From positions 62,001 to 126,000 of the IMG/VR virus record IMGVR_UViG_3300029983_000007: 64,000 nucleotides of DNA, one strand, 5' to 3'. A program made the position numbers and the translations under genes. This document shows, piece by piece, positions 292-58,202 of this stretch (position 1 is the stretch's first letter; each line of letters begins with the position of its first letter). Below the pieces are notes generated by a model that did not search any database, was not told the DNA's origin, and saw only the letters and a program-made list of their open reading frames with translations.

Positions 292-322
292 CAAATTTAC
301 TAAAATTATTTGATAATACAAA
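292..322 (-). promoter_or_regulatory. Bacteroidota-type primary-sigma promoter
   Basis: TTTG-N19-TAAATTTG on minus strand. Confidence 0.65.
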
Positions 323-989
323 AATTTATTGTCAAATAATTATTATGAATTTTTTTTATCTCACACAATTTATCTTTTCTTTTGTATACAGGATTACACA
401 CTAGGCATATAAGACCGTGTTTTTTTGTATTCCACATCATCTGATAATCACCTTTTTGTTTGCATTTAGGACATGATTCGTTACTTTCTGAACCTATAAC
501 TTGATAATCTAATGAATAATAATCATTATCAAAAGAATAAAATTCAGAGTCTCCATCAAGTAAACTGTTTATGCTATACCATCCATCGTCATTATCGTTA
601 TATTTTTGTAGTATAATTTTAAGTTCTGATTTAGCATCTTCTGATAATTTAGTATTATATTTCCATAAATCCCAATCTTCATTATTACATGTTGAAATTA
701 AATAGCAATCTGCAACTTTTTTTATATAAGTATCATAATTGCAACTTTGAAATGTTATTGCCTGATTCTCATCTAAATTTTGTAAAAAATTTAGATATTT
801 ATCGTGCTCATTTTTTCGATATTCATCCTGTTTTTTATCTCCACCTCCATAATCTCCATAATCTCCATATTCATCATATTTTCTATTAATCATATATGTA
901 GCAAGTTCACGTACACTTTTAAAATTCTTATCTGATATTATAAAACTACTTGATGATGAATTACTAACAAATCCAGTTCTTATTTTCAT
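306..989 (-). CDS. NSSSSS-leader family protein with C-terminal Zn ribbon and RxxKL tail
   Basis: MKIRTGFVSNSSSSSF; CPKC...CLVC; KRKDKLCEI. Confidence 0.85.
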   Translation of the reverse strand: MKIRTGFVSNSSSSSFIISDKNFKSVRELATYMINRKYDEYGDYGDYGGGDKKQDEYRKNEHDKYLNFLQNLDENQAITFQSCNYDTYIKKVADCYLISTCNNEDWDLWKYNTKLSEDAKSELKIILQKYNDNDDGWYSINSLLDGDSEFYSFDNDYYSLDYQVIGSESNESCPKCKQKGDYQMMWNTKKHGLICLVCNPVYKRKDKLCEIKKIHNNYLTINFCIIK

Positions 990-1008
990 TTTCTATTATT
1001 TTCTATTA

Positions 1009-1311
1009 TTAACAATATGTCGTACCAGTTATCAATTCAACTTCACTAATATCAACATTTAATGTGTCTGCTACTAATTTAGATTTTTCTATTATATCTG
1101 ATATCGATGTTGCACTATCACTTAACTCTTCACTTCTTGATATTATATAACCAACAATATATTCGTAATTACTATTTTCAACATTAATTACTTCAATATT
1201 ATTGTCAAATCCTTGTTCAATTTCATCTGTAGTGCAATTTGCTCTTTTGATACCAATTACCACAAAGCTACTTGAACTTGAATTACTCACAAATCCTTTT
1301 CTTATTTTCAT
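1009..1311 (-). CDS. NSSSSS-leader family protein
   Basis: MKIRKGFVSNSSSSSF. Confidence 0.85.
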   Translation of the reverse strand: MKIRKGFVSNSSSSSFVVIGIKRANCTTDEIEQGFDNNIEVINVENSNYEYIVGYIISRSEELSDSATSISDIIEKSKLVADTLNVDISEVELITGTTYC

Positions 1312-1324
1312 ATTTTCTTATTTT

Positions 1325-1786
1325 TTATCCATTTCTACCTGCGCCAAAATAAACTTCTGATTTATTTAAGTCTAACCCTGATTTTTCACTATAAAAAGCA
1401 TTATAAACTTTTTTGTCATTATTCTCAAAGAATGACATATCAATATCATAATCAATATCATCATAATCAGATGTCATAAAATCTGAATCACCTTCATTAT
1501 TGCATATATTAACAACTAAAAATAAATCTTCATCTTTACAATCTTTAGTATCTAACGAAGCATTTGTTTGAAATGACTCTACATAAATTTTATTATTGTT
1601 AAAATGTATATCATAATTACCGCTTTCTTTAATATTAGATAACGTTAATACTTTAACATAATAATCCAATTTAATATTATTATCTTTTGTGTATTGTGTA
1701 AATTCGTTGTAATCATTAATCTTGGCTATACCAACAATAAAACTACTTGATGATGAATTACTTACGAAACCATTTCTTATTTTCAT
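1325..1786 (-). CDS. NSSSSS-leader family protein (start corrected to ATG 1786)
   Basis: MKIRNGFVSNSSSSSF begins at 1786; track extension overlaps the upstream gene. Confidence 0.85.
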   Translation of the reverse strand: MKIRNGFVSNSSSSSFIVGIAKINDYNEFTQYTKDNNIKLDYYVKVLTLSNIKESGNYDIHFNNNKIYVESFQTNASLDTKDCKDEDLFLVVNICNNEGDSDFMTSDYDDIDYDIDMSFFENNDKKVYNAFYSEKSGLDLNKSEVYFGAGRNG

Positions 1787-1799
1787 ATTCTTATTTTTT

Positions 1800-2390
1800 T
1801 TACAATAAATGTGGTCTTGCTTCAGCAATTCCAGCATTTGTTACTTGATACCATTTTGGATTGTATTCAGATAGATTGTTAGCTCCTCCATAAGATAATG
1901 CTGAACGAACTCCATAAATTAATCCTTCTATTACAAATCTTACTCCACCTTTGAATGGTATAGTTGTTGACTCTCCTTCTACATTTCTCTCAGCTTGACC
2001 ATGAACAGTTTTAGTTTCCAATGATGCAGAGCCTCTATAGCGTTTATATAAACCATTAGGACTCTCTATAACCTTACCTGGTGATTCTTCTGTTCCTGCT
2101 AATAGAGAACCTAACATGATTGTTGATGATCCTAATGCAAGAGCTTTAGAAATATCTCCACTTGATCTAATTCCACCATCAGCCATAACTGGTACTGTTG
2201 CTACATTTAAAATTTCTATTAAACTTGTCACATTTGGAACACCAAATCCTGTCTTAATCCTTGTTGTACAAAGAGAATTATGAACAACAATACCATTTAT
2301 ATTATACGAATGTGTTTTTTCTACTGTTAAATCATAAACTTTGCCTGTATAATTCTTTTTCTCAATGCTTTTTATTTCTACTAATTTCAT
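1800..2390 (-). CDS. Split intein C-half fused to C-terminal extein of GuaB/GuaC-family (IMPDH/GMP reductase) enzyme
   Basis: VYDLTVEKTHSYNINGIVVHN|SLCTTRIKTGFG; then ADGGI, KALALG, MLGSLLAGTEESPG, YRGSAS. Confidence 0.92.
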   Translation of the reverse strand: MKLVEIKSIEKKNYTGKVYDLTVEKTHSYNINGIVVHNSLCTTRIKTGFGVPNVTSLIEILNVATVPVMADGGIRSSGDISKALALGSSTIMLGSLLAGTEESPGKVIESPNGLYKRYRGSASLETKTVHGQAERNVEGESTTIPFKGGVRFVIEGLIYGVRSALSYGGANNLSEYNPKWYQVTNAGIAEARPHLL

Positions 2391-2512
2391 ATTATATCTT
2401 TTAATTTTTTAATAAAACTTCCATCATTTATCTCATTCTCCCAAATTCTAATTAATTTAAAATTGTGTTCTAATGCAAATTTATTTTTCTTTATATCTTT
2501 TTCAAATTTCAA
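2387..2512 (-). pseudogene. Internally deleted Vsr-like homing endonuclease relic between intein halves
   Basis: 41-aa frame LKFEKDIKKNKFALEHNFKLIRIWENEINDGSFIKKLKDII; overlaps IntN stop and IntC ATG. Confidence 0.7.
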
Positions 2513-3371
2513 CTAAAAAATATTTATCAGTTAAATTTCCTGCTGGTATCCATTCAGCATACTCTTCAATATTTGATGAGTTAACTAAACCTTTATATTT
2601 TATATTTACAACATAAAATTCATGATTTTTTGTGCATTCTATGCCATTTATAATAATAATTTCCTCATTTCTATCAAACTCTAATTTATTTAATACTTTA
2701 TTGAGTTCTCCATTATGACTATAAACTTCATCTCCAATTTTTACATCAATTATATCAATATATCCTTCTGAAGTTTTAACTTTCATGCTAGGTGTAAAAC
2801 AGCCTCCACCAATACCACATCTTAGTCCATCAGCTCCCCAATTTTGTAAATCAATAGCTGCTTCTGATGTAGCAATATTACCTGCAATTATATCCACTCC
2901 TAAATCTAATCCTTTAATTGCTTCGATTGCTTTTTTTACATTTATGTGATGACCATGTGCAACATCAATAAGAATAACATTTACTCCTGCTTCAATTAAT
3001 GATTTGGATCTTTCTAAAAAATCTCCGTTTGAACCTACTGCTGCCATTACTGGAATTTTGTGCCTTATTTTATCTTGATTGAAAGGATCATATGAACTAT
3101 TCTCAATACTTGTAATTAATTTTTTAATTTCATTTGCCTGTTCTTCAATAGACATAAATCTATGAATACATCCTACTCCTCCTAATTGAAACATTTTAAA
3201 TGCCATTTCATGTTCACAAACTGTGTCCATGGGTGATGCTACTAATGGTATCATCAACTCAAAATTTGTCGATAATTTTGTTCTTAAACTAATTTTATTT
3301 CTATGTTTAACTTCACTGTAAAATGGTATGAGTTGAATATCATCATACGTTAACGCTATGTTATTTGTCAT
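2502..3371 (-). CDS. N-terminal extein of GuaB/GuaC-family enzyme fused to split intein N-half
   Basis: LTYDDI, SPMDTV, GGVGCIHR, IDVAHGH, AGNIAT, GIGGG|CFTPSMKV...CTKNHEFYV. Confidence 0.92.
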   Translation of the reverse strand: MTNNIALTYDDIQLIPFYSEVKHRNKISLRTKLSTNFELMIPLVASPMDTVCEHEMAFKMFQLGGVGCIHRFMSIEEQANEIKKLITSIENSSYDPFNQDKIRHKIPVMAAVGSNGDFLERSKSLIEAGVNVILIDVAHGHHINVKKAIEAIKGLDLGVDIIAGNIATSEAAIDLQNWGADGLRCGIGGGCFTPSMKVKTSEGYIDIIDVKIGDEVYSHNGELNKVLNKLEFDRNEEIIIINGIECTKNHEFYVVNIKYKGLVNSSNIEEYAEWIPAGNLTDKYFLVEI

Positions 3372-3390
3372 TCTTTATTTTATTTGTTTT

Positions 3391-3846
3391 TTATTTGTTT
3401 TTTGGTAGTAATAATAACTTTAGATATCTACTATTCAAATCAACACTATTGTTCATGTGTGATAATAATATTGGATGTAATTTATAACTTAAATCTGAAT
3501 CAGATATTACATCAAAGTCACCAATGAATTTTTTAAAGTTTTTCATTACACTTTTACTATCACGTATGTCAGAATTTAATATGAAATTTAGAATATTTAG
3601 AATTTCATATTCATCATTATCAATTTTCCACATTTTACAATATTCTGACCAAAAATCAGCACTATAATCTATTCTTTGTGACCTATATTTATTTTTAACT
3701 TCACTTATAAATTCATTTTTACCCAATTTATTAAAAAAAGATGTAGTCTTTTCTATTAAATAATCAGGTGATGTAGTTATAATTTTATTATCATTTAACA
3801 TAATTCCAAGATAATAAAATACATTATATGCTTGATTTTTAGTCAT
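3391..3846 (-). CDS. hypothetical protein
   Basis: 151 aa ORF in operon-like run. Confidence 0.6.
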   Translation of the reverse strand: MTKNQAYNVFYYLGIMLNDNKIITTSPDYLIEKTTSFFNKLGKNEFISEVKNKYRSQRIDYSADFWSEYCKMWKIDNDEYEILNILNFILNSDIRDSKSVMKNFKKFIGDFDVISDSDLSYKLHPILLSHMNNSVDLNSRYLKLLLLPKNK

Positions 3847-3852
3847 AATTTT

Positions 3853-4245
3853 TTAATAGTTATCGTTACTTACCATTTGAATATATGTGTTAATTACTCC
3901 TGTGATACCATATTTTTCAAATTTTTTACGTAATTCTTCTTCTTGTTCTGATGTACGATCTTTAAATTCAATCACTTCTCCGTCATCTAATCTTCCTAAT
4001 GATTCTCCTACTATAAGAGTATTATAGTCTTTTTCTCCAAAATAATTACCATCTACTTCAACACTAAAATCATTGTCAATTTTATTTGAAAAAAATTCAA
4101 ATTTATCATAATCATCTTCAATGTTATCAAATTCTTCGTCTTTAATGTTTAAGAATTTTGCTAACTCATAAATAGTAAGTTTAATTCCTCTTACAACGAA
4201 AGAAGAACTACTTGAATTGCTTACAAATCCACTTCTAATTTTCAT
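3853..4245 (-). CDS. NSSSSS-leader family protein
   Basis: MKIRSGFVSNSSSSSF. Confidence 0.85.
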   Translation of the reverse strand: MKIRSGFVSNSSSSSFVVRGIKLTIYELAKFLNIKDEEFDNIEDDYDKFEFFSNKIDNDFSVEVDGNYFGEKDYNTLIVGESLGRLDDGEVIEFKDRTSEQEEELRKKFEKYGITGVINTYIQMVSNDNY

Positions 4246-4262
4246 ACTTTTTAATTTATTTT

Positions 4263-4703
4263 TTAATAATTTCCTCCACTTTGTATGTGAATGACATCAT
4301 TGTTTACATTTATTCCTGTTTCACACAAATATCCTTCTAATCCGTCTCCAGAATCATCTGATGCAGAGCCTTCATAATAACGATATTCTTTATTTAATAT
4401 TTTCACTAAATCTTCTCTTGGTATGTGAGGATATCCTTGATCAATTATTTCATCTATCATTTCGTCATCTGATAATTTATTACCTGAATCACAATAATTT
4501 TCAAATATATCTTTAATGCTCATTTCTTTAAGATTTCTAATCATCCAATCTGATAGTCCATTTGCAAAGTCAAATAATATTGAATTTTCATTCAAATCAA
4601 ACAACTTCATAAGAGTATCTTTTGATAATTCTTTTTCATTTTTTACAGTAACAATGAAAGAACTACTACTGCTATTACTAACAAATCCATTTCTTAATTT
4701 CAT
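4263..4703 (-). CDS. NSSSSS-leader family protein
   Basis: MKLRNGFVSNSSSSSF. Confidence 0.85.
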   Translation of the reverse strand: MKLRNGFVSNSSSSSFIVTVKNEKELSKDTLMKLFDLNENSILFDFANGLSDWMIRNLKEMSIKDIFENYCDSGNKLSDDEMIDEIIDQGYPHIPREDLVKILNKEYRYYEGSASDDSGDGLEGYLCETGINVNNDVIHIQSGGNY

Positions 4704-5059
4704 GATTTTTTATTTAATAGTTCTGTTATTTTTTTACTATCAGCGACAACAATTTGACCGTCATCTGGTCCACCTTCTACAGTTGCTATTACATATGCAC
4801 TAATTACATCATTTAAATTATCAAAAAAATCATATTCATGATTTTTATCATACTTTTTTGAATAATCATATATTTCTTCATTGTAGAAACCCCCGTCATC
4901 AACTAGCCTTTTTAACAATTCTTTAAATCCATCTAATGGAAAATCTTCATATTCATCAGTGATCTTTTTATAGTCAACAATATCAAGAAAATTCTCAGGT
5001 AATAGAATTACAAAAGACGAGCTACTTGAGTTGCTAACAAATCCTTTTCTTATTTTCAT
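4700..5059 (-). CDS. NSSSSS-leader family protein
   Basis: MKIRKGFVSNSSSSSF. Confidence 0.85.
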   Translation of the reverse strand: MKIRKGFVSNSSSSSFVILLPENFLDIVDYKKITDEYEDFPLDGFKELLKRLVDDGGFYNEEIYDYSKKYDKNHEYDFFDNLNDVISAYVIATVEGGPDDGQIVVADSKKITELLNKKS

Positions 5060-5098: not shown

Positions 5099-5740
5099 TT
5101 AGTTTATTAATCTATCTATTCCGATAGCAAATCCAACTCCACCATCATATTCTCCTCCACCACAAATTTGTTTAGATGAACCTAATTTTTCGCAAGTTAT
5201 TTCAAATCCCTTACCATCTTTATAATAATCAAGTCCTCTTCTAACATCGTTATTGACAACATAATCATCAACATTAGTATTGAAATTGTTTGTTAATAAT
5301 TTCATTGCTAAATGTTGCAAGTTTGCTCCATCAGAAAGATAATCATGAGATGGATTTAAAATTTCAACTCCAAGTTGAGTGAATTGCCTATATCTTCCCG
5401 ACTGTGGTTTTTCCCCACGAAAGCATTCACAAACATAGAACAATAATACATCATTTTCATTTTTGTATGTTGTTTTAGATAGTTTTTGCGCTATTGCAGT
5501 ATATTCAGGAGCTAAACACAAATATCTATCTCCTCTATCTTTGAAATTGTACATCATGTTGTTATTTTCTTCTCCTACCTTATCTTTGAATAATTCTTGA
5601 AATTGTATAATAGGAATTTGTATTTCTTCAAAATGATATTCATCAATTAATATTTTAATCATTGAATTTATCAATTCTCTTTTTTCATTACCAACTAAAA
5701 TCCTAGTTCCTTTGTAACAAGTTTCTTTTATTATTTTCAT
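5099..5740 (-). CDS. Histidyl-tRNA synthetase-like catalytic core lacking anticodon-binding domain
   Basis: MYNFKDRG, LAPEYT, FRGEKPQSGRYRQFTQLGVE (motif 2), RGLDYY, GGGEY...GFAIGIDRL (motif 3); only 213 aa. Confidence 0.85.
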   Translation of the reverse strand: MKIIKETCYKGTRILVGNEKRELINSMIKILIDEYHFEEIQIPIIQFQELFKDKVGEENNNMMYNFKDRGDRYLCLAPEYTAIAQKLSKTTYKNENDVLLFYVCECFRGEKPQSGRYRQFTQLGVEILNPSHDYLSDGANLQHLAMKLLTNNFNTNVDDYVVNNDVRRGLDYYKDGKGFEITCEKLGSSKQICGGGEYDGGVGFAIGIDRLIN

Positions 5741-6624
5741 TTATCAATCTCACTCCATTCTTTAAGTAAATTACCATATTTCCAACATTGTACAAGTATT
5801 GATCTAGCTGCATAATACATTGACCCTGATATTCCTAAAAAATCCATTTCAAATGATGTTTTGCTCGCTACTTCTTTAAGTAAATCTAAATCAATTTCTT
5901 TGTTTTTTGATATTGCTTCTGACTGCATTAATTTAGCCCATCCTTCAGCATATTCAAATATACAATTACCATAAGAGTCAGTATTATTGGACTTCCAATC
6001 TTCCCAAGATTTTTCATCTAATAGTTCAATACTAATTCCTTTTATTTTTTCTTTATATTTTCTTTTTGTTTCAACTTCTTTTTTATGTTCTTCAATTCTT
6101 CTTTTTATTGATTCCTCTTCAGATTTTTTTAATTTTTTCTCATAATCATTTTTAGTTTTATCATCATATTCATCATCACATATCGGACCAATTTTAGTCC
6201 ATTTCATAAAATGAGCATCATTATAATACTTATGTAAATTATTGAGATTTGTGTTTTTGTCAATTAAACAAATGATACCATTAAAATCAAAGCTACAAAT
6301 TAAATTGTTTGCAATAGAAAACTTTTTTGCTTCTTTTGAAGTGTAATCAAAATCATATCCTAGCATAACTTGCATTCTCACTCCTGAAGTAGAATTACTA
6401 AGAATTTCTAAAATTTTTTCTTCTTCACTATTGATGATTAAGTTATTAAGAACTTTTAATTTCAATTTTCTATCAATATCATTATTAACACAGAATGTTA
6501 TATACTCTCCATATTCACATTCATAATAACTTGAAAAATTTATATTATTTGATATAAGATATTTAATTAAAATATAATTTTTATCTTTTTTATCTTTTAT
6601 TGTATATGTGAAATATTTATTCAT
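5737..6624 (-). CDS. hypothetical protein; N-domain related to 6912..7355
   Basis: Internal RKLKLKVL...EEKIL shared with neighbour. Confidence 0.7.
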   Translation of the reverse strand: MNKYFTYTIKDKKDKNYILIKYLISNNINFSSYYECEYGEYITFCVNNDIDRKLKLKVLNNLIINSEEEKILEILSNSTSGVRMQVMLGYDFDYTSKEAKKFSIANNLICSFDFNGIICLIDKNTNLNNLHKYYNDAHFMKWTKIGPICDDEYDDKTKNDYEKKLKKSEEESIKRRIEEHKKEVETKRKYKEKIKGISIELLDEKSWEDWKSNNTDSYGNCIFEYAEGWAKLMQSEAISKNKEIDLDLLKEVASKTSFEMDFLGISGSMYYAARSILVQCWKYGNLLKEWSEIDK

Positions 6625-9951: not shown

Positions 9952-11031
9952 TTAAATTTTATATAGAGGACAATCACGATTACAACGAATAAGGTTATTT
10001 CTAAAATTAATAGTCTTTTCGTTATTCCAAATATCATCAATAAAATTACCACATTTTAAAACATTTAGTCCTTCTTTCCAATTTTCTGTATTTGGAGTAA
10101 ATGAGCAAGGAAAATAATTTCCTTTGACATCAATATAGCTACTATAACAACTTGACTCACATGGCTCTACACATTGCTTCATTTTGTTTCTGTATTCATC
10201 TGATAATGAGTTATCTGATTCCAAATATTTTAGAAATTTGTGACTACTGCAACTATCAAATCCTATACTTATTTTTTCATCTAATGCAAATTTGCAAAGT
10301 TCATTAAACTTATCCTGTGGTAAAGGGTGAAATCTATTTTCTGCTCTACCTTTAGTTTTTAAACTTAGTAAAACTAATGCGTTAAGATTTTTTAATCTTT
10401 CATCATTTTTACAATCTTTAATTACTTGCATTGTATAGTCAAAATTTTCCAAGCAAATCATATCGTGAATGTTTACTTGTGTCATTCCTCTATCAGTTAA
10501 TTCTTTTATTGCGTTGTAACTATTGTCTTTATTATAAGATGTACCAACTGATACAGCAACTGCTCCCATTGTTTTTGATAATCTATCATACAATTCTGAT
10601 GTCATTCGTGATCCATTTATTGTTACATTAGGAACAACATCTTGAGAGCGAGTATAATCAAAAATATCCCACATATCTGGATTTGAATCAATGTCTGTTA
10701 TTCCAAATGCTACCTGAGTTACAGTTAAAGGAAGCTTAGAAAAAATGTTTTTATATGTGTCTAATGACATATATTCACCATCTTTATTGTTGCTCTTGTA
10801 GCAAAATGAACAGTTTTGTTTACACGCTGTGTCAATTTCAATATCAGCAATTTCAGGTAATCCTATTTCTAAATCACCATCATCATCTTCTGTTTTACCC
10901 CATCTGGCAAAAAACCCTGTTTTTTTGTTAAATAAGAAATTGTAGTTTTCTGATTTTAAAATTTTAACATCTTTATTATCTACAATTAGTGCTTCTTCAC
11001 CGTTTGAAAGTTTTAATTTAGTTTGTTTCAT
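9952..11031 (-). CDS. Radical SAM enzyme with SPASM/twitch-like C-terminal domain
   Basis: CKQNCSFC (CX3CX2C); C-terminal CES...YIDVKGNYFPCSF...CNRDCP. Confidence 0.9.
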   Translation of the reverse strand: MKQTKLKLSNGEEALIVDNKDVKILKSENYNFLFNKKTGFFARWGKTEDDDGDLEIGLPEIADIEIDTACKQNCSFCYKSNNKDGEYMSLDTYKNIFSKLPLTVTQVAFGITDIDSNPDMWDIFDYTRSQDVVPNVTINGSRMTSELYDRLSKTMGAVAVSVGTSYNKDNSYNAIKELTDRGMTQVNIHDMICLENFDYTMQVIKDCKNDERLKNLNALVLLSLKTKGRAENRFHPLPQDKFNELCKFALDEKISIGFDSCSSHKFLKYLESDNSLSDEYRNKMKQCVEPCESSCYSSYIDVKGNYFPCSFTPNTENWKEGLNVLKCGNFIDDIWNNEKTINFRNNLIRCNRDCPLYKI

Positions 11032-23655: not shown

Positions 23656-24528
23656 TTAAAACTTTTTCATTTTTTGGTAAGAAATTTCATTTCTTTCGTT
23701 ACTACGTTGCTTATCTTTCTTTTTTTGTTCTTTCTTGTCCTTCCAAGATGTACCTTCAGATTTATCTTTGATATTTAAGATTGGTTTGATTTTATCAAGA
23801 ATCAAAGCAGTAGGTCCAATTGCTTTTTCAATCATTTCAGAGTTTTTGTAAGCAAATGGTGATTCATCAATTGTACTTTTACATACAGAAGTTGAATATA
23901 TACCTTTCATTACTCTCTGAAAGTCTTTTAAATCAACTGACTCTTTTGCTTTTGATCTTGACATCAAACGACCAGAACCATGTGGAGCTGAGTTATTCCA
24001 ATCTTCATTTGATTTACCTTCACATATAAGTATTCCATCTCTCATATTGAATGGTATAATCATTTTTTCTCCAACATATGAAGATATAGCACCTTTTCTT
24101 ATGATAAAGTCTTTGAAATCCACATAGTTATGTATTGAATGAATTTCTTCATCAAATTTTTTGATATTCAATGCTTTTTTTATCAAAGACAACATAGTTT
24201 TTCTGCTCCATAGAGCATATTGTTGAGCAAAAATCATATCAAATAGATAACCAATAAGATATTCTCCGTCTAAATATTCTTTGCCAATATTAAGACTGTA
24301 TCTTGTTCTCAATTCTTTTATTTTTTTATCAATATCAGATTTTGGATAAGTATTCATAGTAATGTCATCCAATTCCATGTTATATTCTTTGGTTGCAACA
24401 AATACTTTACCATTTGCTACTTTAGTCCAGTGTTCAGCTATTTTCAAACCAAAGTTTCTTGAGCCAGAGTGAACTGTTACCCAATAATCATTAGTCTTAT
24501 CTGACTTACCAAGTTCAATAAAGTGATT
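23656..24528 (-). CDS. rtcB: RtcB RNA ligase, 3' exon
   Basis: NHFIE, VHSGSRNFG, HNY, RKGA, SAPHGSGR, IDESPFAYK. Confidence 0.93.
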   Translation of the reverse strand, partial: NHFIELGKSDKTNDYWVTVHSGSRNFGLKIAEHWTKVANGKVFVATKEYNMELDDITMNTYPKSDIDKKIKELRTRYSLNIGKEYLDGEYLIGYLFDMIFAQQYALWSRKTMLSLIKKALNIKKFDEEIHSIHNYVDFKDFIIRKGAISSYVGEKMIIPFNMRDGILICEGKSNEDWNNSAPHGSGRLMSRSKAKESVDLKDFQRVMKGIYSTSVCKSTIDESPFAYKNSEMIEKAIGPTALILDKIKPILNIKDKSEGTSWKDKKEQKKKDKQRSNERNEISYQKMKKF

Positions 24529-25622
24529 CAATTTTGTTACTATTATTTTAATTTCAATCTAAATAACCTCATTTTTATAGATTGCTTTGTTCTTTTAAGA
24601 TTTTCTATTGATTCAGATATATCATTATTTATAATATAATTATCTTCATAGTCTGTCCATATTTTACGTTCAAAATCTATTTTTTTGATATTAATTGGTC
24701 TTTCCCAATTTAATATTTTTTGAGCAGAATCATATTTTCTATTTATACTCATACAATCTTTATAATATAATATTTCAATTATTTTTTGAGAATTTTCATT
24801 CATCACCATTATATTATATAAGTTATCTCTTTTATTTTTATTTGTTATTTTTTTATATCCAATAATGTTAGATAAAAAAACAACAAATTGTTCAGCAAGT
24901 TTACTAGAACATGTAACTAAAGATATGAAAGGTAATCCTTTTTTTGTAAATCCTAATGATCCATCGCCATCTATAACTCCTCTCCAGTAATCAATTTCTA
25001 TTATATTATCTGGTTTCTGAATTGTGTGTGATTTTTTACCAACAGGTAAATACTTTTTAAATTCATTTCTTGTTTCTAATTCAAATATTTTTAATGCTGA
25101 TGTATTTGAAATATATTTGTATTCTTTAATATTAATATTTCTTGTTCTTTCAGTTATTGAAACATTACAATTAAGAATAGATTTTATATATTTTAATATA
25201 TTATCATCACTTTTATTTATTTCAAGTGTGATTCTTCCTCTATTTCTAGTTGATTCGTATAAATTACCATCAGTTTGTAATAAACCTATAATGTATGCAT
25301 GTTTCTTATTTAAAATGTCTATTTTCATAATGTGTTTTTATTTGTATATATAATTTCACTTTATTGAAAATTTACATTTCATTGAAATTGTAATAACGAG
25401 ATAGACATTTCTGCTATCTTCAATATCTTCTTATTAAATATTGTTCAGAATGTACCTTTTACCTTTGTGTATTACAGTGAGATAAAACAAGTCCCTCCAT
25501 TCGTTACAGGGTGTTATCTAAAATGACAGAGCACTTCCCTCGGTATTAGCATCACAGCCGTCCACCGATTTGGACGATTTTAACTACTATTAGCTATTAA
25601 CTAATACGGTGGCAATCAATTC
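24529..25622 (-). mobile_element. Group I intron in rtcB carrying a LAGLIDADG endonuclease
   Basis: Interrupts GGG|NHF; exon GGTGGT pairs with IGS GCCACC (U.G at splice site); TGATT/AATCA P10; AAATCGGT/ATACCGAG P4; GAATG/CATTC P7; terminal G. Confidence 0.9.
24543..25328 (-). CDS. Intron-encoded double-motif LAGLIDADG homing endonuclease
   Basis: YIIGLLQTDGNL and YWRGVIDGDGSL; own late-type promoter at 25345-25353. Confidence 0.9.
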   Translation of the reverse strand: MKIDILNKKHAYIIGLLQTDGNLYESTRNRGRITLEINKSDDNILKYIKSILNCNVSITERTRNINIKEYKYISNTSALKIFELETRNEFKKYLPVGKKSHTIQKPDNIIEIDYWRGVIDGDGSLGFTKKGLPFISLVTCSSKLAEQFVVFLSNIIGYKKITNKNKRDNLYNIMVMNENSQKIIEILYYKDCMSINRKYDSAQKILNWERPINIKKIDFERKIWTDYEDNYIINNDISESIENLKRTKQSIKMRLFRLKLK

Positions 25623-26144
25623 ACCACCGCCTAACGTTCCAATTGATTTATAAAATTTACCTTCGTCAATACCTATATCTTTCAATTTTGATGTTAGCCA
25701 TTTTTCATTGTATGTAGGTGATTCATAAGAAGTTCCAAATTTTTCATTAAATTTTACAATGAAATTATCCGCAATTACTTGAACATCGCCAAACGGTATA
25801 TTTTTAAATTTAATATCTTCGTGCATACCAAATCCCATAGGAACATTTTCACGTATAAGATTGTCAATTTTCTCTAAATCTAATGAAGTCTTACCTGAAA
25901 AACTTGCGCTAAGCATCCCGCAGCCCAAATCTACTCCGATCGTCGACGGCTTAATGTATTTACCTAATTCTTGTGTATATCCGATTACGCATCCCGATCC
26001 AACATGTGTATCTGGCATTATTCTGATTTTCAATCCTTTAGATGTCTCAGAATTAATACTATCATATATTTGAGTATATACTCCTTCTTCAACTTCATCG
26101 ATAAATATTTTAGCGTCAGTATATTTACCTTTTAATTCAATCAT
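25623..26144 (-). CDS. rtcB: RtcB RNA ligase, 5' exon
   Basis: IMPDTHVG, IGVDLGCGM, SIGTLGGG; spliced product 464 aa. Confidence 0.93.
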
Positions 26145-48068: not shown

Positions 48069-48140
48069 TTGAGCAAGAGGTCTGATTTGAACAGAATCTT
48101 TTTACTGGAAGTAAAAAGCATTAACATATGCTACCTCTGC
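48069..48140 (-). tRNA. Degenerate tRNA-Gly(TCC)-like gene
   Basis: GCAGAGG/CCTCTTGC bulged acceptor; GCAT/ATGC D-stem; TTTTA-CTTCCAG-TAAAA anticodon arm; TCTG-TTCAAAT-CAGA T-arm; ends TCAA; terminator follows. Confidence 0.6.
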
Positions 48141-48311: not shown

Positions 48312-48464
48312 ATGAAAAACAAATCAAAAATTTCGATATCATTAAAAAATGAATTGATAGATTATTTAAATGACTTGAGTTTAAATAAATCTAAATTTAT
48401 AGAAAAATTAATAGAAGAGTATAAAATAATAAAAATAAATAATGATAATAACAAAAAAAGTTAA
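48312..48464 (+). CDS. Small ribbon-helix-helix protein upstream of endonuclease
   Basis: MKNKSKISISLKNELIDYLNDLSLNKSKFIEKLIEEY; below track cut-off. Confidence 0.7.
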   Translation: MKNKSKISISLKNELIDYLNDLSLNKSKFIEKLIEEYKIIKINNDNNKKS

Positions 48465-49431
48465 AATTCATATTAAAGGAATATCAATAAAAAGATATAA
48501 AAAATTAGGTTATAATGTTGATACTAAAGGATTAAATACTATTAATGTTGAAGATCTTCCTAAATGTAGTAATATTAAAGTCATGGTGAAATGTGATAAT
48601 TGTGATTATGAAAAAGAATTAAAGATTCAAGATTATTATTTATCTTTTAAAAATAATAAATATTGTTGTAATAAATGCTCATATGAAAATTATAAAAAAA
48701 CAATGTTAGAAAGATATGGAGTTGAAAATGGATTTCAATATAAAGACATAAAAGAAAAATCTAATAGCACTAAAATAAAATTATATGGAGATGAAAATTA
48801 CAATAATAGAGAAAAAGCGATAGAAACATGTTTAGATAAATATGGTGTTGAAAATCCTAATCAAAATTATAAAATAAAAAAAAAATCTAATAATACTTGC
48901 TTAGAAAAATATGGATTTGAAACAGCATCTAAAAATGAAAAAGTAAAGGAAAAAATAAAAAAAACAAATTTGAAAAGATGGAACAGTACATGTACATTAC
49001 ATTCAGAAAAACAAATTGATAAAATTAAACAAATATTTATTGATAAATATGGAGTTGATAATCCTATGAAGAATTTAGAAATATTTTTAAAAGCCCAAAA
49101 AACAGCTCTAAATCGTAAAAAATTTAAAGAAACTGAATTATTATATCAAGGTACATATGAATTAGATTTTTTAAATAATTATTATGAAAAAATTAATATT
49201 GAAAATGGTAAATCAATAAAAATAATTTATAATAATAATAAAACTGTGTATCATTCTGATTTTTTTTTATCTGAAAAAAATTTAATTATAGAAATAAAAT
49301 CATCATATTGGTATAATAGATATTATGATAAAAATATAATTAAACAAAAAGAATGTGAAAAATTAGGATATAATTATATCATAATAATAGATAAAAATTA
49401 TAATGATTTTAATAAATTAATAATGATTTAA
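48442..49431 (+). CDS. Putative homing endonuclease: Zn-finger, KYGVEN repeats, PD-(D/E)XK nuclease
   Basis: CDNC/CNKC; several (K/R)YGV(E/D)N repeats; YHSDFFL...IIEIKS. Confidence 0.75.
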   Translation: MIITKKVKIHIKGISIKRYKKLGYNVDTKGLNTINVEDLPKCSNIKVMVKCDNCDYEKELKIQDYYLSFKNNKYCCNKCSYENYKKTMLERYGVENGFQYKDIKEKSNSTKIKLYGDENYNNREKAIETCLDKYGVENPNQNYKIKKKSNNTCLEKYGFETASKNEKVKEKIKKTNLKRWNSTCTLHSEKQIDKIKQIFIDKYGVDNPMKNLEIFLKAQKTALNRKKFKETELLYQGTYELDFLNNYYEKINIENGKSIKIIYNNNKTVYHSDFFLSEKNLIIEIKSSYWYNRYYDKNIIKQKECEKLGYNYIIIIDKNYNDFNKLIMI

Positions 49432-49470: not shown

Positions 49471-50952
49471 TTATATATTTGTTTCTTCTAATTTTTTTAA
49501 TTCATCTTTTAACTTTTCAAGTTCTTCGTGTTTTTGATTCATTACTTTCTTCCATTTTTTTCTATCAGAATAAACTTCTCCCATTACTTGAGTAACAACA
49601 CCATCTTCATTCTTAAATACTGATCCATTGAGAGTTACAATATCATCAGGTTCAATTGTTAATTGATGTCCATTAAATAATGAGTAATCTTTACCTTTTA
49701 CTTTTTGTCCTTTATATGAGTCTGCTGATATGTTAAATTCTCTCATTGTGGTAGGATACAGGGATGCGAAGTCAAAACAACAAGTCCATGTTGCCATTCC
49801 TCTCACTGGATCTTTAACCCATCCACCTTTAATAGATTCAGATTCAGAATCACTATATTCACTATCTTCATTTCTTACAAGTACAATATTCTTTTGATCT
49901 CTTAATTTTTCTCTTAAAATTCCTTCTGTCAGTGCAAGTGTTGAAATTGCATCTTTAATTTTAATTTTACCTAATACAGCCATACCATAAAGAATATCTA
50001 CATATTTCATTTTAACGTGAATTCTTTGTACCAGACAACTATCTACAGCATTATAAAAAACGAATTTCTTAAAATCTTCTCTATGTAATCTTTTTAAATC
50101 TCCATCATAGTTAATTTTCTTGACTTCTTTACCAAGAATTTTTTCTGATGCAAAATCAAGAGATAAACTTTCTTTAACTTTAACAGATTGATCCCATTTC
50201 TTAAATAATTCCATATAATCCACTATAACTCTATGAGCTGGTAATTCAGCATAATCTAAATGTATTGCATTAGGAGGATTGAATGGTTTGTTAAGTTTCT
50301 TTGTGAAAGATGCTACTTCAGGTTCTAGTCCTAATTTTCTTGCCCTTGCAACTAAGAATGTCCAGTCATATGCAATAAAATTCCAGCCAGTCATTACTGG
50401 CATTTTTGGAACTAATTTATTGAAAAATGCATGAAGCATATCAAATTCAGTTTTATAATGAACATATTTAAATTTATAATCAGTATCAAATTTTTTGAAG
50501 TGAGTATTTAAATCTGATTCAATGTTTTCAATTTGTTTTGAATCCAGTGATTCTGTTCCAATTACTAACACTTTATTCTTATTTACAATTGATATTGTTT
50601 GAATCGCACTTTCTGCTAAATGAGGTTCAGGTTTTTTATCTAATATTTCATTTTCAATATCGACAAAGAATATATCTGGTTCATTATAACTATATATTTC
50701 ATTTTTTTCATCTTCATCAAAACTATCAATAAAATCATAAATAGAATATCTATTAGGATATTTTGTGAATATTTCTTTTACAGCACTACCATCCCATGTA
50801 ACATATCTACCAGATTTTTCTGAATCATCATCAGTAGTTTTTATGAATTTTGTACATCTTGCCCAAGGTTTATATTTTAATTTTATTTGACCTGATTTAT
50901 CTATGTAACTTATTATAAGGTTATTATTTCTGTATTCTGTGTCTATAAGCAT
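49471..50952 (-). CDS. Family B DNA polymerase, N-terminal subunit (exonuclease plus motif A) of a split gene
   Basis: FVDIE, TGWNFIAYD, YNAVDS, GGWV, FDFASLYP; ends in the fingers helix; no KxxxNSxYG or DTDS. Confidence 0.88.
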   Translation of the reverse strand: MLIDTEYRNNNLIISYIDKSGQIKLKYKPWARCTKFIKTTDDDSEKSGRYVTWDGSAVKEIFTKYPNRYSIYDFIDSFDEDEKNEIYSYNEPDIFFVDIENEILDKKPEPHLAESAIQTISIVNKNKVLVIGTESLDSKQIENIESDLNTHFKKFDTDYKFKYVHYKTEFDMLHAFFNKLVPKMPVMTGWNFIAYDWTFLVARARKLGLEPEVASFTKKLNKPFNPPNAIHLDYAELPAHRVIVDYMELFKKWDQSVKVKESLSLDFASEKILGKEVKKINYDGDLKRLHREDFKKFVFYNAVDSCLVQRIHVKMKYVDILYGMAVLGKIKIKDAISTLALTEGILREKLRDQKNIVLVRNEDSEYSDSESESIKGGWVKDPVRGMATWTCCFDFASLYPTTMREFNISADSYKGQKVKGKDYSLFNGHQLTIEPDDIVTLNGSVFKNEDGVVTQVMGEVYSDRKKWKKVMNQKHEELEKLKDELKKLEETNI

Positions 50953-57451: not shown

Positions 57452-58202
57452 AAGTTAATTTGTTGTTTTGTATATTTATTGAATTGTTTTTATGTATTAA
57501 CAATTCATTTTTTATATCATTAACATCTAAATCAGTGTATCTAGTTTCGCCTATACCACCTTTATCACTAATCGCAAATGCAAAATCTTTACATGAAACT
57601 ACTTTTGTAGGTGGATTGAAATGAAAATAACCATTAATATAACTTTCGTCATTTACGCCGGGCTCATATGGTATTTTTTTATCTTCAAGTTGATAAAATA
57701 ACATAATATTACAAAATTTTATCATGTTTTCAGAATTACCTCCAAAAAATGCACCGTAGTAATACATTTGAGGTAATTTAGTATCAAGTGGTACATATGC
57801 TTTTGATAATGGATTTCTATCGAATCCTTTTTCATTTTTCATCCAATCTTGATCTGCATAATGTTGTCCTCCAACCAAATCACCAACAAACCATTCTTCT
57901 GTAAAATCAGTATTTACATTAGTATCAGCATCAAAATAAAACAAGTAATCACTTTTTAATTTATTTTTTATTGATAATATTGATGTAAATTTCAAATTAG
58001 TACCATCAACCCAATTGCTATTAGATGCATAAAAATATTCTACATCTATATCATCAGGAATATAATCTTTTGGATTATTATCAGAGAAAAAATAAAATGT
58101 TATATTTTTATCTCCTTTATAAAAATTCATAAATCTTTTAATAAATCTCACACCCAATACAAAATATGCATTTGTTGCTAATACTACTATTCCTATATTC
58201 AT
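57432..58202 (-). CDS. GT6 (ABO-type) glycosyltransferase
   Basis: IGIVVLATNAY, FYFFSD, YFDAD, YYYGAFFGG, NDESYIN. Confidence 0.8.
   Translation of the reverse strand: MNIGIVVLATNAYFVLGVRFIKRFMNFYKGDKNITFYFFSDNNPKDYIPDDIDVEYFYASNSNWVDGTNLKFTSILSIKNKLKSDYLFYFDADTNVNTDFTEEWFVGDLVGGQHYADQDWMKNEKGFDRNPLSKAYVPLDTKLPQMYYYGAFFGGNSENMIKFCNIMLFYQLEDKKIPYEPGVNDESYINGYFHFNPPTKVVSCKDFAFAISDKGGIGETRYTDLDVNDIKNELLIHKNNSINIQNNKLTYEYWNI

What the first reader, a model, noticed from the sequence alone, without database searches (positions are those of the whole stretch)
5099..5740. Minimal HisRS with intact catalytic motifs but no anticodon-binding domain
Seen: 213 aa with motif 2, RGLDYY and motif 3 intact. 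The insertion domain is collapsed and the protein ends right after motif 3. It lies immediately upstream of the NSSSSS-leader genes. Established: HisRS identity relies mainly on G-1 of the acceptor stem, and truncated class II paralogs such as EpmA modify proteins. Inference: it may charge anticodon-damaged tRNA-His (fitting with RtcB) or histidylate a non-tRNA acceptor such as the Ser-rich leaders.
Basis: partly seen in the sequence, partly recalled or inferred. Interest (0 to 1): 0.6.

Follow-up and report, generated by a model that had tools for sequence, protein, structure and literature searches.

The report
Core-only histidyl-tRNA synthetase of huge phages
A huge bacteriophage encodes a 213-residue histidyl-tRNA synthetase reduced to its bare catalytic core, one of over a thousand similar phage proteins that often sit beside phage tRNA-His genes, so it most likely charges tRNA-His by reading only the acceptor end.

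Summary
Window 5099-5740 (-) encodes a 213-aa protein that is the HisRS class II catalytic core. Motifs 1, 2 and 3, RGLDYY and the histidine pocket are intact. About 29 residues replace the roughly 115-residue insertion domain. The chain ends 3 residues after the motif-3 arginine, and there is no anticodon-binding domain.

It is not a decayed hisS. It belongs to a large family (1745 hits, 202-239 aa among the best 120, 66-91% identity). The architecture is the same throughout, all catalytic residues are invariant, and dN/dS is about 0.1. The family sits almost only on phage-like contigs. The window itself is a Mahaphage-like huge phage.

In more distant relatives the gene lies inside tRNA arrays. 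It is often 5-17 nt from tRNA-His(GTG) genes that carry an encoded G-1 and C73, within tRNA-repair islands. Five complete or near-complete carrier genomes have no full-length HisRS, and none shows a separate gene for the missing domain.

Best reading: an anticodon-blind mini-HisRS that charges tRNA-His through the acceptor stem.

The link to the Ser-rich "leader" genes is confined to the closest relatives, and those genes encode small globular proteins.

Activity is untested, and no published description was found.

The parts
5099..5740 (-). Mini-HisRS coding sequence, 213 aa (P0001). It is the class II catalytic core only.
   Evidence: The AF2 model has pLDDT 86.8 and its best fold match is E. 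coli HisRS, TMq 0.76-0.80.
5600..5635 (-). Motif 1 region (residues 36-47, HFEEIQIPIIQF), with invariant E39 and P43. This is the predicted dimer interface.
   Evidence: Alignment A1. The predicted homodimer interface includes residues 38-47.
5495..5515 (-). LAPEYTA loop (residues 76-82). E79 and T81 correspond to E. coli E83 and T85, which contact histidine.
   Evidence: both residues invariant.
5357..5449 (-). Motif 2 and its loop (residues 98-128). R108, E110, K111, Q113, R116, R118, Q122 and E126 correspond to E. coli R113, E115, R116, Q118, R121, R123, Q127 and E131. They bind ATP, the adenylate and the tRNA acceptor end.
   Evidence: Roles are taken from PMC4357726.
5270..5356 (-). Short linker (residues 129-157, one helix) that replaces the roughly 115-residue HisRS insertion domain. 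It is the most variable part of the family.
5222..5239 (-). HisA motif RGLDYY (residues 168-173). R168 corresponds to the catalytic Arg259 of E. coli HisRS.
5144..5161 (-). HisB-like motif GGGEYD (residues 194-199). The canonical Arg is replaced by Glu, and this position varies in the family.
5102..5140 (-). Motif 3 (residues 201-213, GVGFAIGIDRLIN). R210 corresponds to E. coli R311. The protein ends 3 residues later.
5737..6624 (-). Context only. The upstream gene (295 aa) has a C-terminal Tad4 (Thoeris inhibitor) domain, and its stop overlaps the mini-HisRS start (ATGA). It is a lineage-specific insertion, not a conserved partner.
306..5059 (-). Context only. A cluster of MKIRxGFVSNSSSSSF paralogues (306-989, 1009-1311, 1325-1837, 3853-4245, 4263-4703, 4700-5059), interleaved with an intein-interrupted IMPDH-like gene. 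It lies next to the mini-HisRS only in the closest relatives.

Best explanation
The gene encodes a working minimal histidyl-tRNA synthetase of a huge (Mahaphage-like) bacteriophage.

Proposed mechanism:
- It forms a class II homodimer through motif 1.
- It binds histidine and ATP in an unaltered HisRS active site and makes histidyl-adenylate.
- It transfers histidine to tRNA-His, which it recognises only at the acceptor end (G-1, C73, the first base pairs and CCA), using the motif-2 loop and the N-terminal KGTR segment.
- Lacking both the anticodon-binding and insertion domains, it should be blind to the anticodon loop and to the tRNA body. It could therefore serve host tRNA-His and the phage's own tRNA-His variants, including long-variable-arm forms.
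- This would keep His decoding going during infection, alongside the phage's tRNA genes, CCA-adding enzyme and RNA-repair enzymes.

What is shown: the architecture, the conservation of catalytic and acceptor-contact residues, purifying selection, the family's size and restriction to phages, genomic linkage to tRNA-His in relatives, and the absence of a trans-encoded missing domain.

What is inferred: adenylation activity (very likely), tRNA-His as the acceptor (likely), and the biological purpose (speculative).
For: 1. Sequence and fold. HisRS is the best hit in Pfam, NCBIfam and PDB. The AF2 model (pLDDT 86.8) superposes best on E. coli HisRS.

2. Conservation. In a 44-member alignment the following are invariant: E79, T81, R108, R116, R118, E126, R168, Y172, Y173, G194-196, Y198 and R210. 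E110, Q122 and F204 are nearly so. These are the histidine, ATP and catalytic residues of HisRS.

3. tRNA contacts. These T. thermophilus residues contact G-1 and C70-A76 in the HisRS-tRNA-His complex: R7, E114, R115, Q117, R120 and R122 (PMC4357726). Here they correspond to K10, E110, K111, Q113, R116 and R118, all invariant or nearly so. The same paper reports that insertion-domain contacts (R197A, K209A) are largely dispensable.

4. Selection. dN/dS is 0.08-0.13 between relatives.

5. Family size. There are 1745 homologues at E<=0.001. The best 120 are 202-239 aa apart from one 279-aa member, and 66-91% identical. Only 3 mini-type hits turned up in 185,579 species-representative genomes, all on MAG contigs.

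6. Linkage to tRNA-His.
- In 11 distinct loci with 4 or more nearby tRNA genes, 9 contain tRNA-His(GTG).
- In 5 of those 11, tRNA-His is the nearest tRNA (5-275 nt away, same strand). The expected share is 9%, binomial p about 0.002.
- Of 15 distinct tRNA-His genes, 14 have G at -1, and the 15th has it inside the ARAGORN call. Only 2 of roughly 135 other tRNAs have G there. All but one atypical gene (L036) end in the acceptor strand plus C73.

7. Genomic setting. The neighbourhoods hold a CCA-adding enzyme, a PNK-like gene, RNA ligase 1, PTH2 and an RF-1 domain gene.

8. No alternative HisRS.
- Five complete or near-complete carrier genomes have no HisRS above the TIGR00442 cut-off.
- Three of the five have no HGTP_anticodon domain at all. 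The other two have it only inside open frames of 395 and 665 aa.
- All three of the five that were checked for tRNA genes carry a tRNA-His gene.

9. Homodimer. The prediction scored 0.86 against a best control of 0.00. That mark was reached by 20 of 30 solved pairs and 1 of 23 single chains. Runs agree in at least 98% of contacts, and partner pLDDT is at least 87.

10. Precedent, from my own knowledge and from reference lists seen. E. coli HisRS charges an acceptor microhelix that depends on G-1:C73 (Francklyn & Schimmel 1990). An engineered catalytic-domain fragment is active at reduced efficiency (Augustine & Francklyn 1997).
Against: No biochemistry exists for any member.

In one study the E. 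coli HisRS catalytic domain alone gave only background aminoacylation and very low suppression (PMC7308279). A core-only enzyme may therefore be a poor tRNA charger unless the family has compensated.

This mini form lacks even the insertion domain, which clamps the acceptor stem in the solved complex.

The window's own 330-kb record holds no tRNA-His gene. The record is only about 46% complete, and a close relative (G002) carries a tRNA-His gene.

In this lineage the gene is not next to tRNA genes; the nearest array is about 8 kb away. Over half of the related loci have no tRNA within 6 kb.

The linkage statistic ignores the relatedness of the loci.

The equivalent of T. thermophilus Glu64, reported as essential for aminoacylation, aligns to Met or Leu.

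The homodimer prediction may simply recall solved HisRS dimers.
Confidence: 0.6

Rival explanations
1. It is a histidine-activating ligase for a non-tRNA acceptor. It would make His-AMP and pass histidine to a protein, peptide, carrier protein or metabolite, as EpmA, AsnA and the SerRS-like amino acid:carrier-protein ligases do with their own substrates. The first reader's version names the neighbouring Ser-rich proteins as acceptors.
For: The architecture, a class II core without tRNA-body-binding domains, is that of known non-tRNA paralogues (established knowledge; table in PMC9437257). In this lineage the gene sits directly upstream of seven MKIRxGFVSNSSSSSF genes. A radical SAM/SPASM gene lies 4 kb away.
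Against: The adjacency to the Ser-rich genes is limited to relatives with 83% identity or more, and is absent in about 30 more distant loci. Those proteins are predicted to be globular over their full length and resemble other small phage proteins. No protein-coding neighbour is conserved family-wide except mobile homing endonucleases. No carrier-protein or EF-P-like gene appears in the Pfam-annotated neighbourhoods. The motif-2 loop residues that read the tRNA acceptor end are invariant, which a non-tRNA ligase would not need. Linkage to tRNA-His genes is seen in relatives.
Confidence: 0.12
2. It charges tRNA-His, but the product is used outside translation. Examples would be as an aminoacyl donor for DNA, cell-wall or protein modification, or as a way to change the charged-tRNA pool for regulation.
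For: There is a precedent: phage Mu Mom uses Gly-tRNA-Gly to hypermodify DNA (PMC13219725). The gene neighbourhoods are rich in nucleic-acid-modifying and ADP-ribosyl-related genes such as ART-PolyVal, NADAR and NUDIX.
Against: No aminoacyl-transferase (Fem/GNAT/L-F-transferase type) is consistently linked to the gene. The simplest use for a synthetase that sits among about 15 tRNA genes, a CCA-adding enzyme and PTH2 is translation.
Confidence: 0.08
3. It is a regulator or signal maker rather than a synthetase. One version is a HisZ-like partner of the host ATP-phosphoribosyltransferase. Another is a producer of His-AMP-derived Ap4A-type nucleotides.
For: HisZ is the known HisRS paralogue without an anticodon-binding domain. 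The protein gives sub-threshold HisZ matches (TIGR00443, 83 bits) and 3od1 matches structurally. Class II synthetases can make Ap4A (established knowledge), and NUDIX genes lie nearby in relatives.
Against: The HisRS models score far better than HisZ (140.6 against 83 bits; PDB 2.9e-22 against 1.8e-3). Invariant catalytic and tRNA-contact residues argue for full chemistry. There is no hisG in the record.
Confidence: 0.06
4. It is a decayed remnant of a full-length hisS picked up from a host, that is, a pseudogene or fragment.
For: The lengths of both HisRS-model matches fall short of the curated cut-offs. One relative (L053) carries a copy with an internal deletion and a frameshift.
Against: Hundreds of family members share the same end points and length. 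Catalytic residues are invariant. dN/dS is about 0.1. The start overlaps the upstream gene's stop, suggesting translational coupling. The fold is confidently predicted and compact.
Confidence: 0.01

Closest known systems
Bacterial histidyl-tRNA synthetase (HisRS, TIGR00442; E. coli 1KMM/1HTT, T. thermophilus 4RDX)
   Same: Both share the class II core with motifs 1-3, the RGLDYY catalytic arginine, the histidine pocket, the motif-2 loop residues that contact G-1 and C70-A76, and a predicted motif-1 homodimer.
   Different: The mini form is half the size. It has no C-terminal anticodon-binding domain, and the insertion domain is replaced by about 29 residues. It ends 3 residues after the motif-3 Arg. 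The HisB Arg is not conserved. It scores below the curated family cut-off.
HisZ (regulatory subunit of ATP-phosphoribosyltransferase; TIGR00443, PDB 3OD1)
   Same: Both are HisRS paralogues without an anticodon-binding domain.
   Different: HisZ is about 300-390 aa, works with the short form of HisG, and does not aminoacylate tRNA (established knowledge). Here the catalytic residues are invariant, no hisG is present, and the HisZ models score much lower.
Engineered HisRS fragments (the catalytic-domain fragment of Augustine & Francklyn 1997; Carter-lab HisRS urzymes)
   Same: Both show that a HisRS core without the anticodon-binding domain can activate histidine and, weakly, acylate tRNA or a minihelix. 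This rests on established knowledge and on references seen.
   Different: Those fragments are laboratory constructs with reduced or background activity. This protein is natural, strongly conserved and abundant, and it also lacks the insertion domain.
Catalytic-domain-only pyrrolysyl-tRNA synthetases (e.g. Methanomethylophilus alvus PylRS, about 275 aa)
   Same: Both are natural class II synthetases consisting of little more than the catalytic core and not reading the anticodon. The fold similarity is TMq about 0.64.
   Different: It is a different amino acid and family. PylRS recognises the compact tRNA-Pyl body, whereas here recognition is expected at G-1:C73.
Truncated class II paralogues with non-tRNA acceptors (EpmA/PoxA, AsnA, SerRS-like amino acid:carrier-protein ligases)
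   Same: All are class II cores stripped of tRNA-body-binding domains.
   Different: They derive from LysRS, AspRS or SerRS, have altered acceptor-binding surfaces, and have conserved partner genes. Here the tRNA-acceptor contact residues are retained and no partner gene is conserved.
Aminoacyl-tRNA synthetases of huge phages (Al-Shayeb et al. 2020, PMC7162821)
   Same: Both are phage-encoded synthetases accompanying large phage tRNA sets, proposed to charge phage tRNA variants. The 642-kb and 635-kb genomes from that collection carry this mini-HisRS at 56% identity.
   Different: That paper does not mention a histidyl enzyme or a core-only architecture.

Membership tests
Histidyl-tRNA synthetase (HisRS) | Class II motifs 1, 2 and 3 with the ATP-binding arginines (E. 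coli R113, R121, R311) | tested here: met
   P43, R108, R116 and R210 are invariant in 44 sequences.
Histidyl-tRNA synthetase (HisRS) | HisA motif RGLDYY with the HisRS-specific catalytic Arg259 | tested here: met
   R168, G169, L170, Y172 and Y173 are invariant.
Histidyl-tRNA synthetase (HisRS) | HisB motif GGRYD | tested here: inconclusive
   The motif reads GGG-x-YD. The Arg position is E here and E/S/A/C in the family. G194-196 and Y198 are invariant.
Histidyl-tRNA synthetase (HisRS) | Histidine-pocket residues (E. coli E83, T85, E131, Y264; T. thermophilus G304/F305) | tested here: met
   E79, T81, E126, Y173 and G203 are invariant, and F204 nearly so.
Histidyl-tRNA synthetase (HisRS) | Residues contacting G-1 and the 3' acceptor strand (T. 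thermophilus R7, E114, R115, Q117, R120, R122) | tested here: met
   The equivalents are K10, E110, K111, Q113, R116 and R118, invariant or at least 90% conserved. Two Arg positions are Lys.
Histidyl-tRNA synthetase (HisRS) | Helical insertion domain between motif 2 and HisA | tested here: not met
   About 29 residues with one short helix replace about 115.
Histidyl-tRNA synthetase (HisRS) | C-terminal HGTP-type anticodon-binding domain | tested here: not met
   There is no PF03129 match in the protein or in the record. None is supplied as a separate small gene in five complete or near-complete relatives.
Histidyl-tRNA synthetase (HisRS) | Score above the curated TIGR00442 cut-off | tested here: not met
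   140.6 bits against a cut-off of 286.75.
Histidyl-tRNA synthetase (HisRS) | Homodimer through motif 1 | tested here: met
   In silico only. The score was 0.86 against a best control of 0.00, and the interface includes residues 38-47.
Histidyl-tRNA synthetase (HisRS) | Histidylation of tRNA-His | not testable with these tools
   Only genomic linkage to G-1/C73 tRNA-His genes in relatives is available.
HisZ | Works with a short-form HisG encoded in the same genome | tested here: not met
   There is no PF01634 match in the 330-kb record, though the record is incomplete.
HisZ | Score above the TIGR00443 cut-off, and a closer match to HisZ than to HisRS | tested here: not met
   83 bits against a cut-off of 271.65. 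The HisRS models and structures score far better.
Class II paralogues with non-tRNA acceptors (EpmA, aa:carrier-protein ligases) | A conserved gene for the acceptor (EF-P, carrier protein) in the neighbourhood | tested here: not met
   No protein-coding neighbour is conserved across 35 loci apart from homing endonucleases. There are no PP-binding or EF-P families in the annotated neighbourhoods.

The most novel reading that the evidence does not exclude
The roughly 205-aa core-only HisRS would be the smallest free-standing natural aminoacyl-tRNA synthetase, working by the acceptor-stem 'operational code' alone. Together with phage-encoded G-1 tRNA-His genes, including an unusual class-II-like form of 86-90 nt with a long variable arm, it would form a phage-private, anticodon-blind charging system. 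That system would keep His codons readable when the host's tRNA-His or HisRS is disabled by defence systems or by the phage itself.
Probability: 0.2. Interest if true: 0.85.

Novelty: new variant of a known kind. Interest (0 to 1): 0.62.

Why it matters
If active, this would be a natural aminoacyl-tRNA synthetase pared down to about 205 residues, close to what has so far been made only in the laboratory (catalytic-domain fragments, urzymes).

It would provide a natural test of whether the acceptor-stem code alone can sustain specific tRNA charging in vivo.

It would also be a compact, possibly anticodon-blind HisRS/tRNA pair for genetic-code engineering.

For phage biology, it points to histidine decoding as a specific pressure point in infections by huge phages. 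It also links a widespread but unstudied gene family to the tRNA and RNA-repair islands of these phages.

Tried and rejected
- Giant virus of eukaryotes. This was my first guess, from 25% GC, Hsp70, collagen and ankyrin genes. I rejected it for these reasons:
  - The family B DNA polymerase (PolB) matches phage family phrog_2062 (8e-73). Its best hits are the 735-kb and 634-642-kb huge phages, followed by Chryseobacterium phages.
  - The tRNA-His genes in relatives are of the bacterial type.
  - The NCLDV capsid search found nothing, but its control was silent, so that search is uninformative.
- Missing domain encoded elsewhere. There is no PF03129 match in the record. In five complete or near-complete relatives it occurs only inside large open frames of 395 and 665 aa.
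- HisZ role. There is no hisG.
- tRNA-His in the own record. It was not found by:
  - ARAGORN at default and relaxed settings;
  - Rfam tRNA;
  - a tRNA-His covariance model.

  One relaxed ARAGORN call, at genome 112271-112345, lies inside the PolB ORF, and I treated it as false.
- Homology of a relative's tRNA-His region to the own record. There is none.
- Conserved protein partner. All-against-all clustering of neighbouring ORFs found none.
- Promoter and terminator scan. It gave no more than chance.
- Literature. Eight searches and several papers gave no description of a core-only phage HisRS.
- Sequencing-run search for expression.
- The large representative protein search was not run. 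The word search and family scans had already settled the protein's identity.
Full report
**What is there**

Window 5099-5740 on the minus strand is an ATG-initiated ORF of 213 codons. Its start overlaps the stop of the upstream gene by four bases (ATGA). It ends 39 nt before the next gene.

The product matches Pfam tRNA-synt_His (1.8e-15) and tRNA-synt_2b. It matches NCBIfam hisS (TIGR00442) at 6.7e-41, well below the curated cut-off (140.6 against 286.75 bits), because the match is in two stretches: model positions 15-132 and 237-312 of 406. Against solved structures the best sequence match is E. coli HisRS (2.9e-22). Residues 24-128 align to E. coli 24-132, and residues 158-202 to E. coli 248-291.

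So about 29 residues replace the roughly 115-residue insertion domain. The chain stops three residues after the motif-3 arginine, and nothing corresponds to the C-terminal anticodon-binding domain.

An AlphaFold2 model built on a 44-sequence family alignment is confident (pLDDT 86.8, pTM 0.85). Its best structural matches are E. coli HisRS chains (E about 1e-15, TMq 0.76-0.80). Catalytic-domain-only PylRS enzymes appear lower in the list.

**What genome this is**

The window is bases 62001-126000 of a 330-kb IMG/VR virus record, estimated 46% complete. GC content is about 25%.

The family B DNA polymerase (PolB, 49471-50952) matches phage family phrog_2062 (8e-73). Its best hits in the phage collection are:
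- the 735-kb huge phage genome, at 55.5% identity;
- the 634-642-kb huge phages;
- Chryseobacterium phages, at 29%.

The window also has PhoH/PIN, Hsp70, collagen-like and TIG-domain proteins, homing endonucleases and a Tad4 (anti-Thoeris) domain. I take it to be a Mahaphage-like huge phage, probably of a Bacteroidota host. The host assignment is an inference.

**It is a family, not a wreck**

The word-based protein search returned 1745 proteins at E<=0.001. The best 120 are 202-239 aa apart from one 279-aa member, and 66-91% identical. They lie on contigs of up to 376 kb.

IMG/VR gave 38 loci, including contigs of 482 kb and 676 kb. The public phage collection holds full-length copies in two huge phages (56% identity). 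It also holds a 43% copy covering three-quarters of the query in the cultured Sinorhizobium phage Phosso, where it is annotated as histidyl-tRNA synthetase. A pattern scan of 185,579 species-representative prokaryote genomes found only three mini-type copies, all on MAG contigs.

Nearly all members end 2-7 residues after the motif-3 Arg, and the only variable stretch is the short linker that replaces the insertion domain. Pairwise dN/dS is 0.08-0.13. The 'decayed hisS' refutation condition is therefore not met.

One relative (L053) does carry a copy with an internal deletion and a frameshift.

**Active site and tRNA-contact residues**

I mapped residues through the HMMER alignment to E. coli HisRS. 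The family alignment shows these residues invariant or nearly so (E. coli equivalents in brackets):
- E79 and T81 (E83, T85)
- R108, E110, R116, Q122 and E126 (R113, E115, R121, Q127, E131)
- R168 with Y172 and Y173 in RGLDYY (R259, Y263, Y264)
- G194-196 and Y198 (the HisB motif)
- G203, F204 and R210 in motif 3 (R311)

The canonical Arg of GGRYD is not conserved; it is E here.

The T. thermophilus HisRS-tRNA-His structure paper (PMC4357726) reports the following:
- G-1 is held by R7, R115 and R122.
- C70-A76 are held by E114, Q117, K118 and R120.
- Insertion-domain contacts are mostly backbone salt bridges, and mutating them costs little.

The equivalents here (K10, K111, R118, E110, Q113, R116) are all conserved. 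A ligase that had given up tRNA would have no reason to keep them. The equivalent of their essential Glu64 aligns to Met or Leu, which is a point against.

A homodimer is predicted through the N-terminal segment and motif 1. The score was 0.86 against a best control of 0.00. That mark was reached by 20 of 30 solved pairs and 1 of 23 single chains. Runs agree in at least 98% of contacts, and partner pLDDT is at least 87. This may partly reflect the model's memory of solved HisRS dimers.

**Genomic company**

In relatives at about 60-75% identity the gene lies inside tRNA gene arrays on the same strand.
- Two tRNA-His(GTG) genes begin 5-7 nt after its stop in three contigs. One or two end 12-17 nt before its start in two others.
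- Phage Phosso has tRNA-His 275 nt upstream, and the 642-kb phage has it 5.5 kb upstream.
- Among 11 distinct loci with four or more nearby tRNAs, nine contain tRNA-His. In five of them it is the nearest tRNA, against a 9% share of all tRNAs (binomial p about 0.002; relatedness of the loci is ignored).

Of 15 distinct tRNA-His genes, 14 have G at position -1, and the 15th has it within the called gene. Only 2 of roughly 135 other tRNAs do. All but one atypical gene (L036) carry C73. In the long-arm forms, G-1:C73, G1:C72, U2:A71 and G3:C70 are 8 of 8. These are exactly the bacterial HisRS identity elements.

The same islands carry a CCA-adding enzyme about 2.5 kb upstream. They also hold a PNK-like kinase with a tRNA-ligase CPD domain, RNA ligase 1, NUDIX and NADAR, and sometimes PTH2 or an RF-1 domain.

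No protein-coding neighbour is conserved across 35 loci except mobile homing endonucleases.

Five complete or near-complete carrier genomes have no HisRS-like gene above the family cut-off other than the mini form. Three of the five have no HGTP anticodon domain at all, and in the other two it lies inside open frames of 395 and 665 aa. All three of the five that were checked for tRNA genes carry tRNA-His.

**This lineage in particular**

In the window and its closest relatives (83-100% identity) the gene has moved out of the tRNA array. The nearest array, at genome 54.9-58.9 kb, is about 8 kb away on the same strand. The gene sits upstream of a cluster of MKIRxGFVSNSSSSSF genes and an intein-interrupted IMPDH-like gene.

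No tRNA-His was found in the 330 kb available. A close relative (G002) has a long-arm tRNA-His with G-1 about 80 kb from its mini-HisRS, in a region with no counterpart in the present record. Whether this phage carries its own tRNA-His is therefore open. If it does not, the substrate would be the host's.

**The Ser-rich genes**

All seven copies in the record lie within genome 62.0-67.0 kb. They match phrog_7397 only over the N-terminal 22-35 residues.

One of them (146 aa) has a stored model covering its whole length (pTM 0.68). That model resembles other small phage proteins of unknown function. The conserved N-terminus therefore looks like the first strand of a small domain, not a cleavable leader.

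Their adjacency to the mini-HisRS disappears outside the closest sub-clade. I see no support for histidylation of these proteins.

**Mechanism and rivals**

The best-supported reading is an anticodon-blind, acceptor-stem-reading HisRS that serves tRNA-His during infection (confidence 0.6). I consider adenylate formation alone very likely (about 0.85). The main caveat is experimental: in one study the isolated E. coli catalytic domain showed only background charging (PMC7308279).

The rivals, with my confidence in each, are:
- a non-tRNA acceptor (0.12);
- non-translational use of His-tRNA-His, with Mu Mom as precedent (PMC13219725) (0.08);
- a HisZ-like or Ap4A-type regulatory role (0.06);
- a pseudogene (0.01).

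**Novelty**

Databases already label some members 'histidyl-tRNA synthetase'. I found no paper that notes the core-only architecture, its abundance or its linkage to tRNA-His. The huge-phage paper does not mention a histidyl enzyme, and a jumbo-phage comparative review does not mention it either. I rate it a new variant of a known kind.

**Limits**

No biochemistry exists for any member. The record is incomplete. The linkage statistics do not account for the relatedness of loci.

Noticed in passing
Related loci L003:8718-8806, L005:6187-6276, L006:8712-8798, L027:4025-4113, L036:5819-5909, L040:3689-3775, L055:1501-1588; own record outside the window, e.g. genome 57990-58078 (Asn, 89 nt), 217599-217684 (Gln, 86 nt), 57751-57838 (Met, 88 nt): These phages carry class-II-like tRNAs with a long variable arm (82-91 nt) for amino acids that normally have short-arm tRNAs: His, Asn, Gln, Met, Glu, Ile, Trp and Cys. 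They often sit next to a normal-length isoacceptor. The long tRNA-His forms keep G-1, G1:C72, U2:A71, G3:C70 and C73. I could not tell whether the mini-HisRS is linked to this form. The purpose of the long arm is unexplained.
   Followed up: partly
window 306-989, 1009-1311, 1325-1837, 3853-4245, 4263-4703, 4700-5059 (all -), plus one copy running off the window start: Seven paralogues share a nearly invariant N-terminus, MKIRxGFVSNSSSSSF, followed by divergent bodies of 100-227 aa (phrog_7397). They are predicted to be globular and to resemble other small phage and Bacteroidota proteins of unknown function. A shared N-terminal tag on diverse bodies recalls the capsid-targeting sequences of T4 internal proteins, but that is only a thought from memory.
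   Followed up: partly
window 5737-6624 (-): A 295-aa protein whose C-terminal 90 residues match Tad4, a Type I Thoeris inhibitor (PF25186, 2.7e-21; phrog_9822). Its stop overlaps the mini-HisRS start. It is present in the sub-lineage of the window, L017 and L019, but not in L013, L014 or L053.
   Followed up: partly
window 23656-24531 and 25590-26144 (-), with ORF 24543-25328 between them: RtcB RNA ligase is split into two ORFs, covering model positions 15-154 and 154-425. They are separated by a 261-aa ORF, probably a mobile element.
   Followed up: no
window 1800-3371 (-): An IMPDH/GMP-reductase-like gene is interrupted by an intein-like insert (Hint-type ends). It is read as two ORFs of 289 and 196 aa with a small ORF between them. 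The relative L013 has the same arrangement with a NUMOD3 endonuclease.
   Followed up: no
window 49471-50952 (-), 48442-49431 (+), 48071-48140 (-): The family B DNA polymerase ORF covers only the N-terminal half of T4-type polymerases (phrog_262 positions 81-502 of 856) and matches a 502-aa split-polymerase family. Next to it are a DUF7487 gene on the other strand and the window's only tRNA (Gly-TCC).
   Followed up: partly
window 9952-11031 (-): A radical SAM enzyme with a SPASM domain lies 4 kb from the mini-HisRS. Its substrate is unknown, and it is not conserved next to the mini-HisRS in distant relatives.
   Followed up: no
L053:6001-6511 (record G002): In this 87%-identical relative the mini-HisRS has lost residues about 64-105 and is frameshifted. 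The copy in L014, with otherwise near-identical surroundings, is intact. This could be a real defective variant or an assembly error.
   Followed up: partly
Own record outside the window, genome 56420-56498, 56515-56591, 54948-55027 (-): The Rfam tRNA model hits these elements at 29-31 bits inside the tRNA array, but ARAGORN does not call them, and they have odd D-arm and anticodon regions.
   Followed up: no
Related loci L013, L024, L045, L049, L050 and others: GIY-YIG/NUMOD-type homing endonuclease genes lie directly beside or overlapping the mini-HisRS in about 10 of 35 loci. This is as expected for a highly conserved phage gene used as a homing target.
   Followed up: partly
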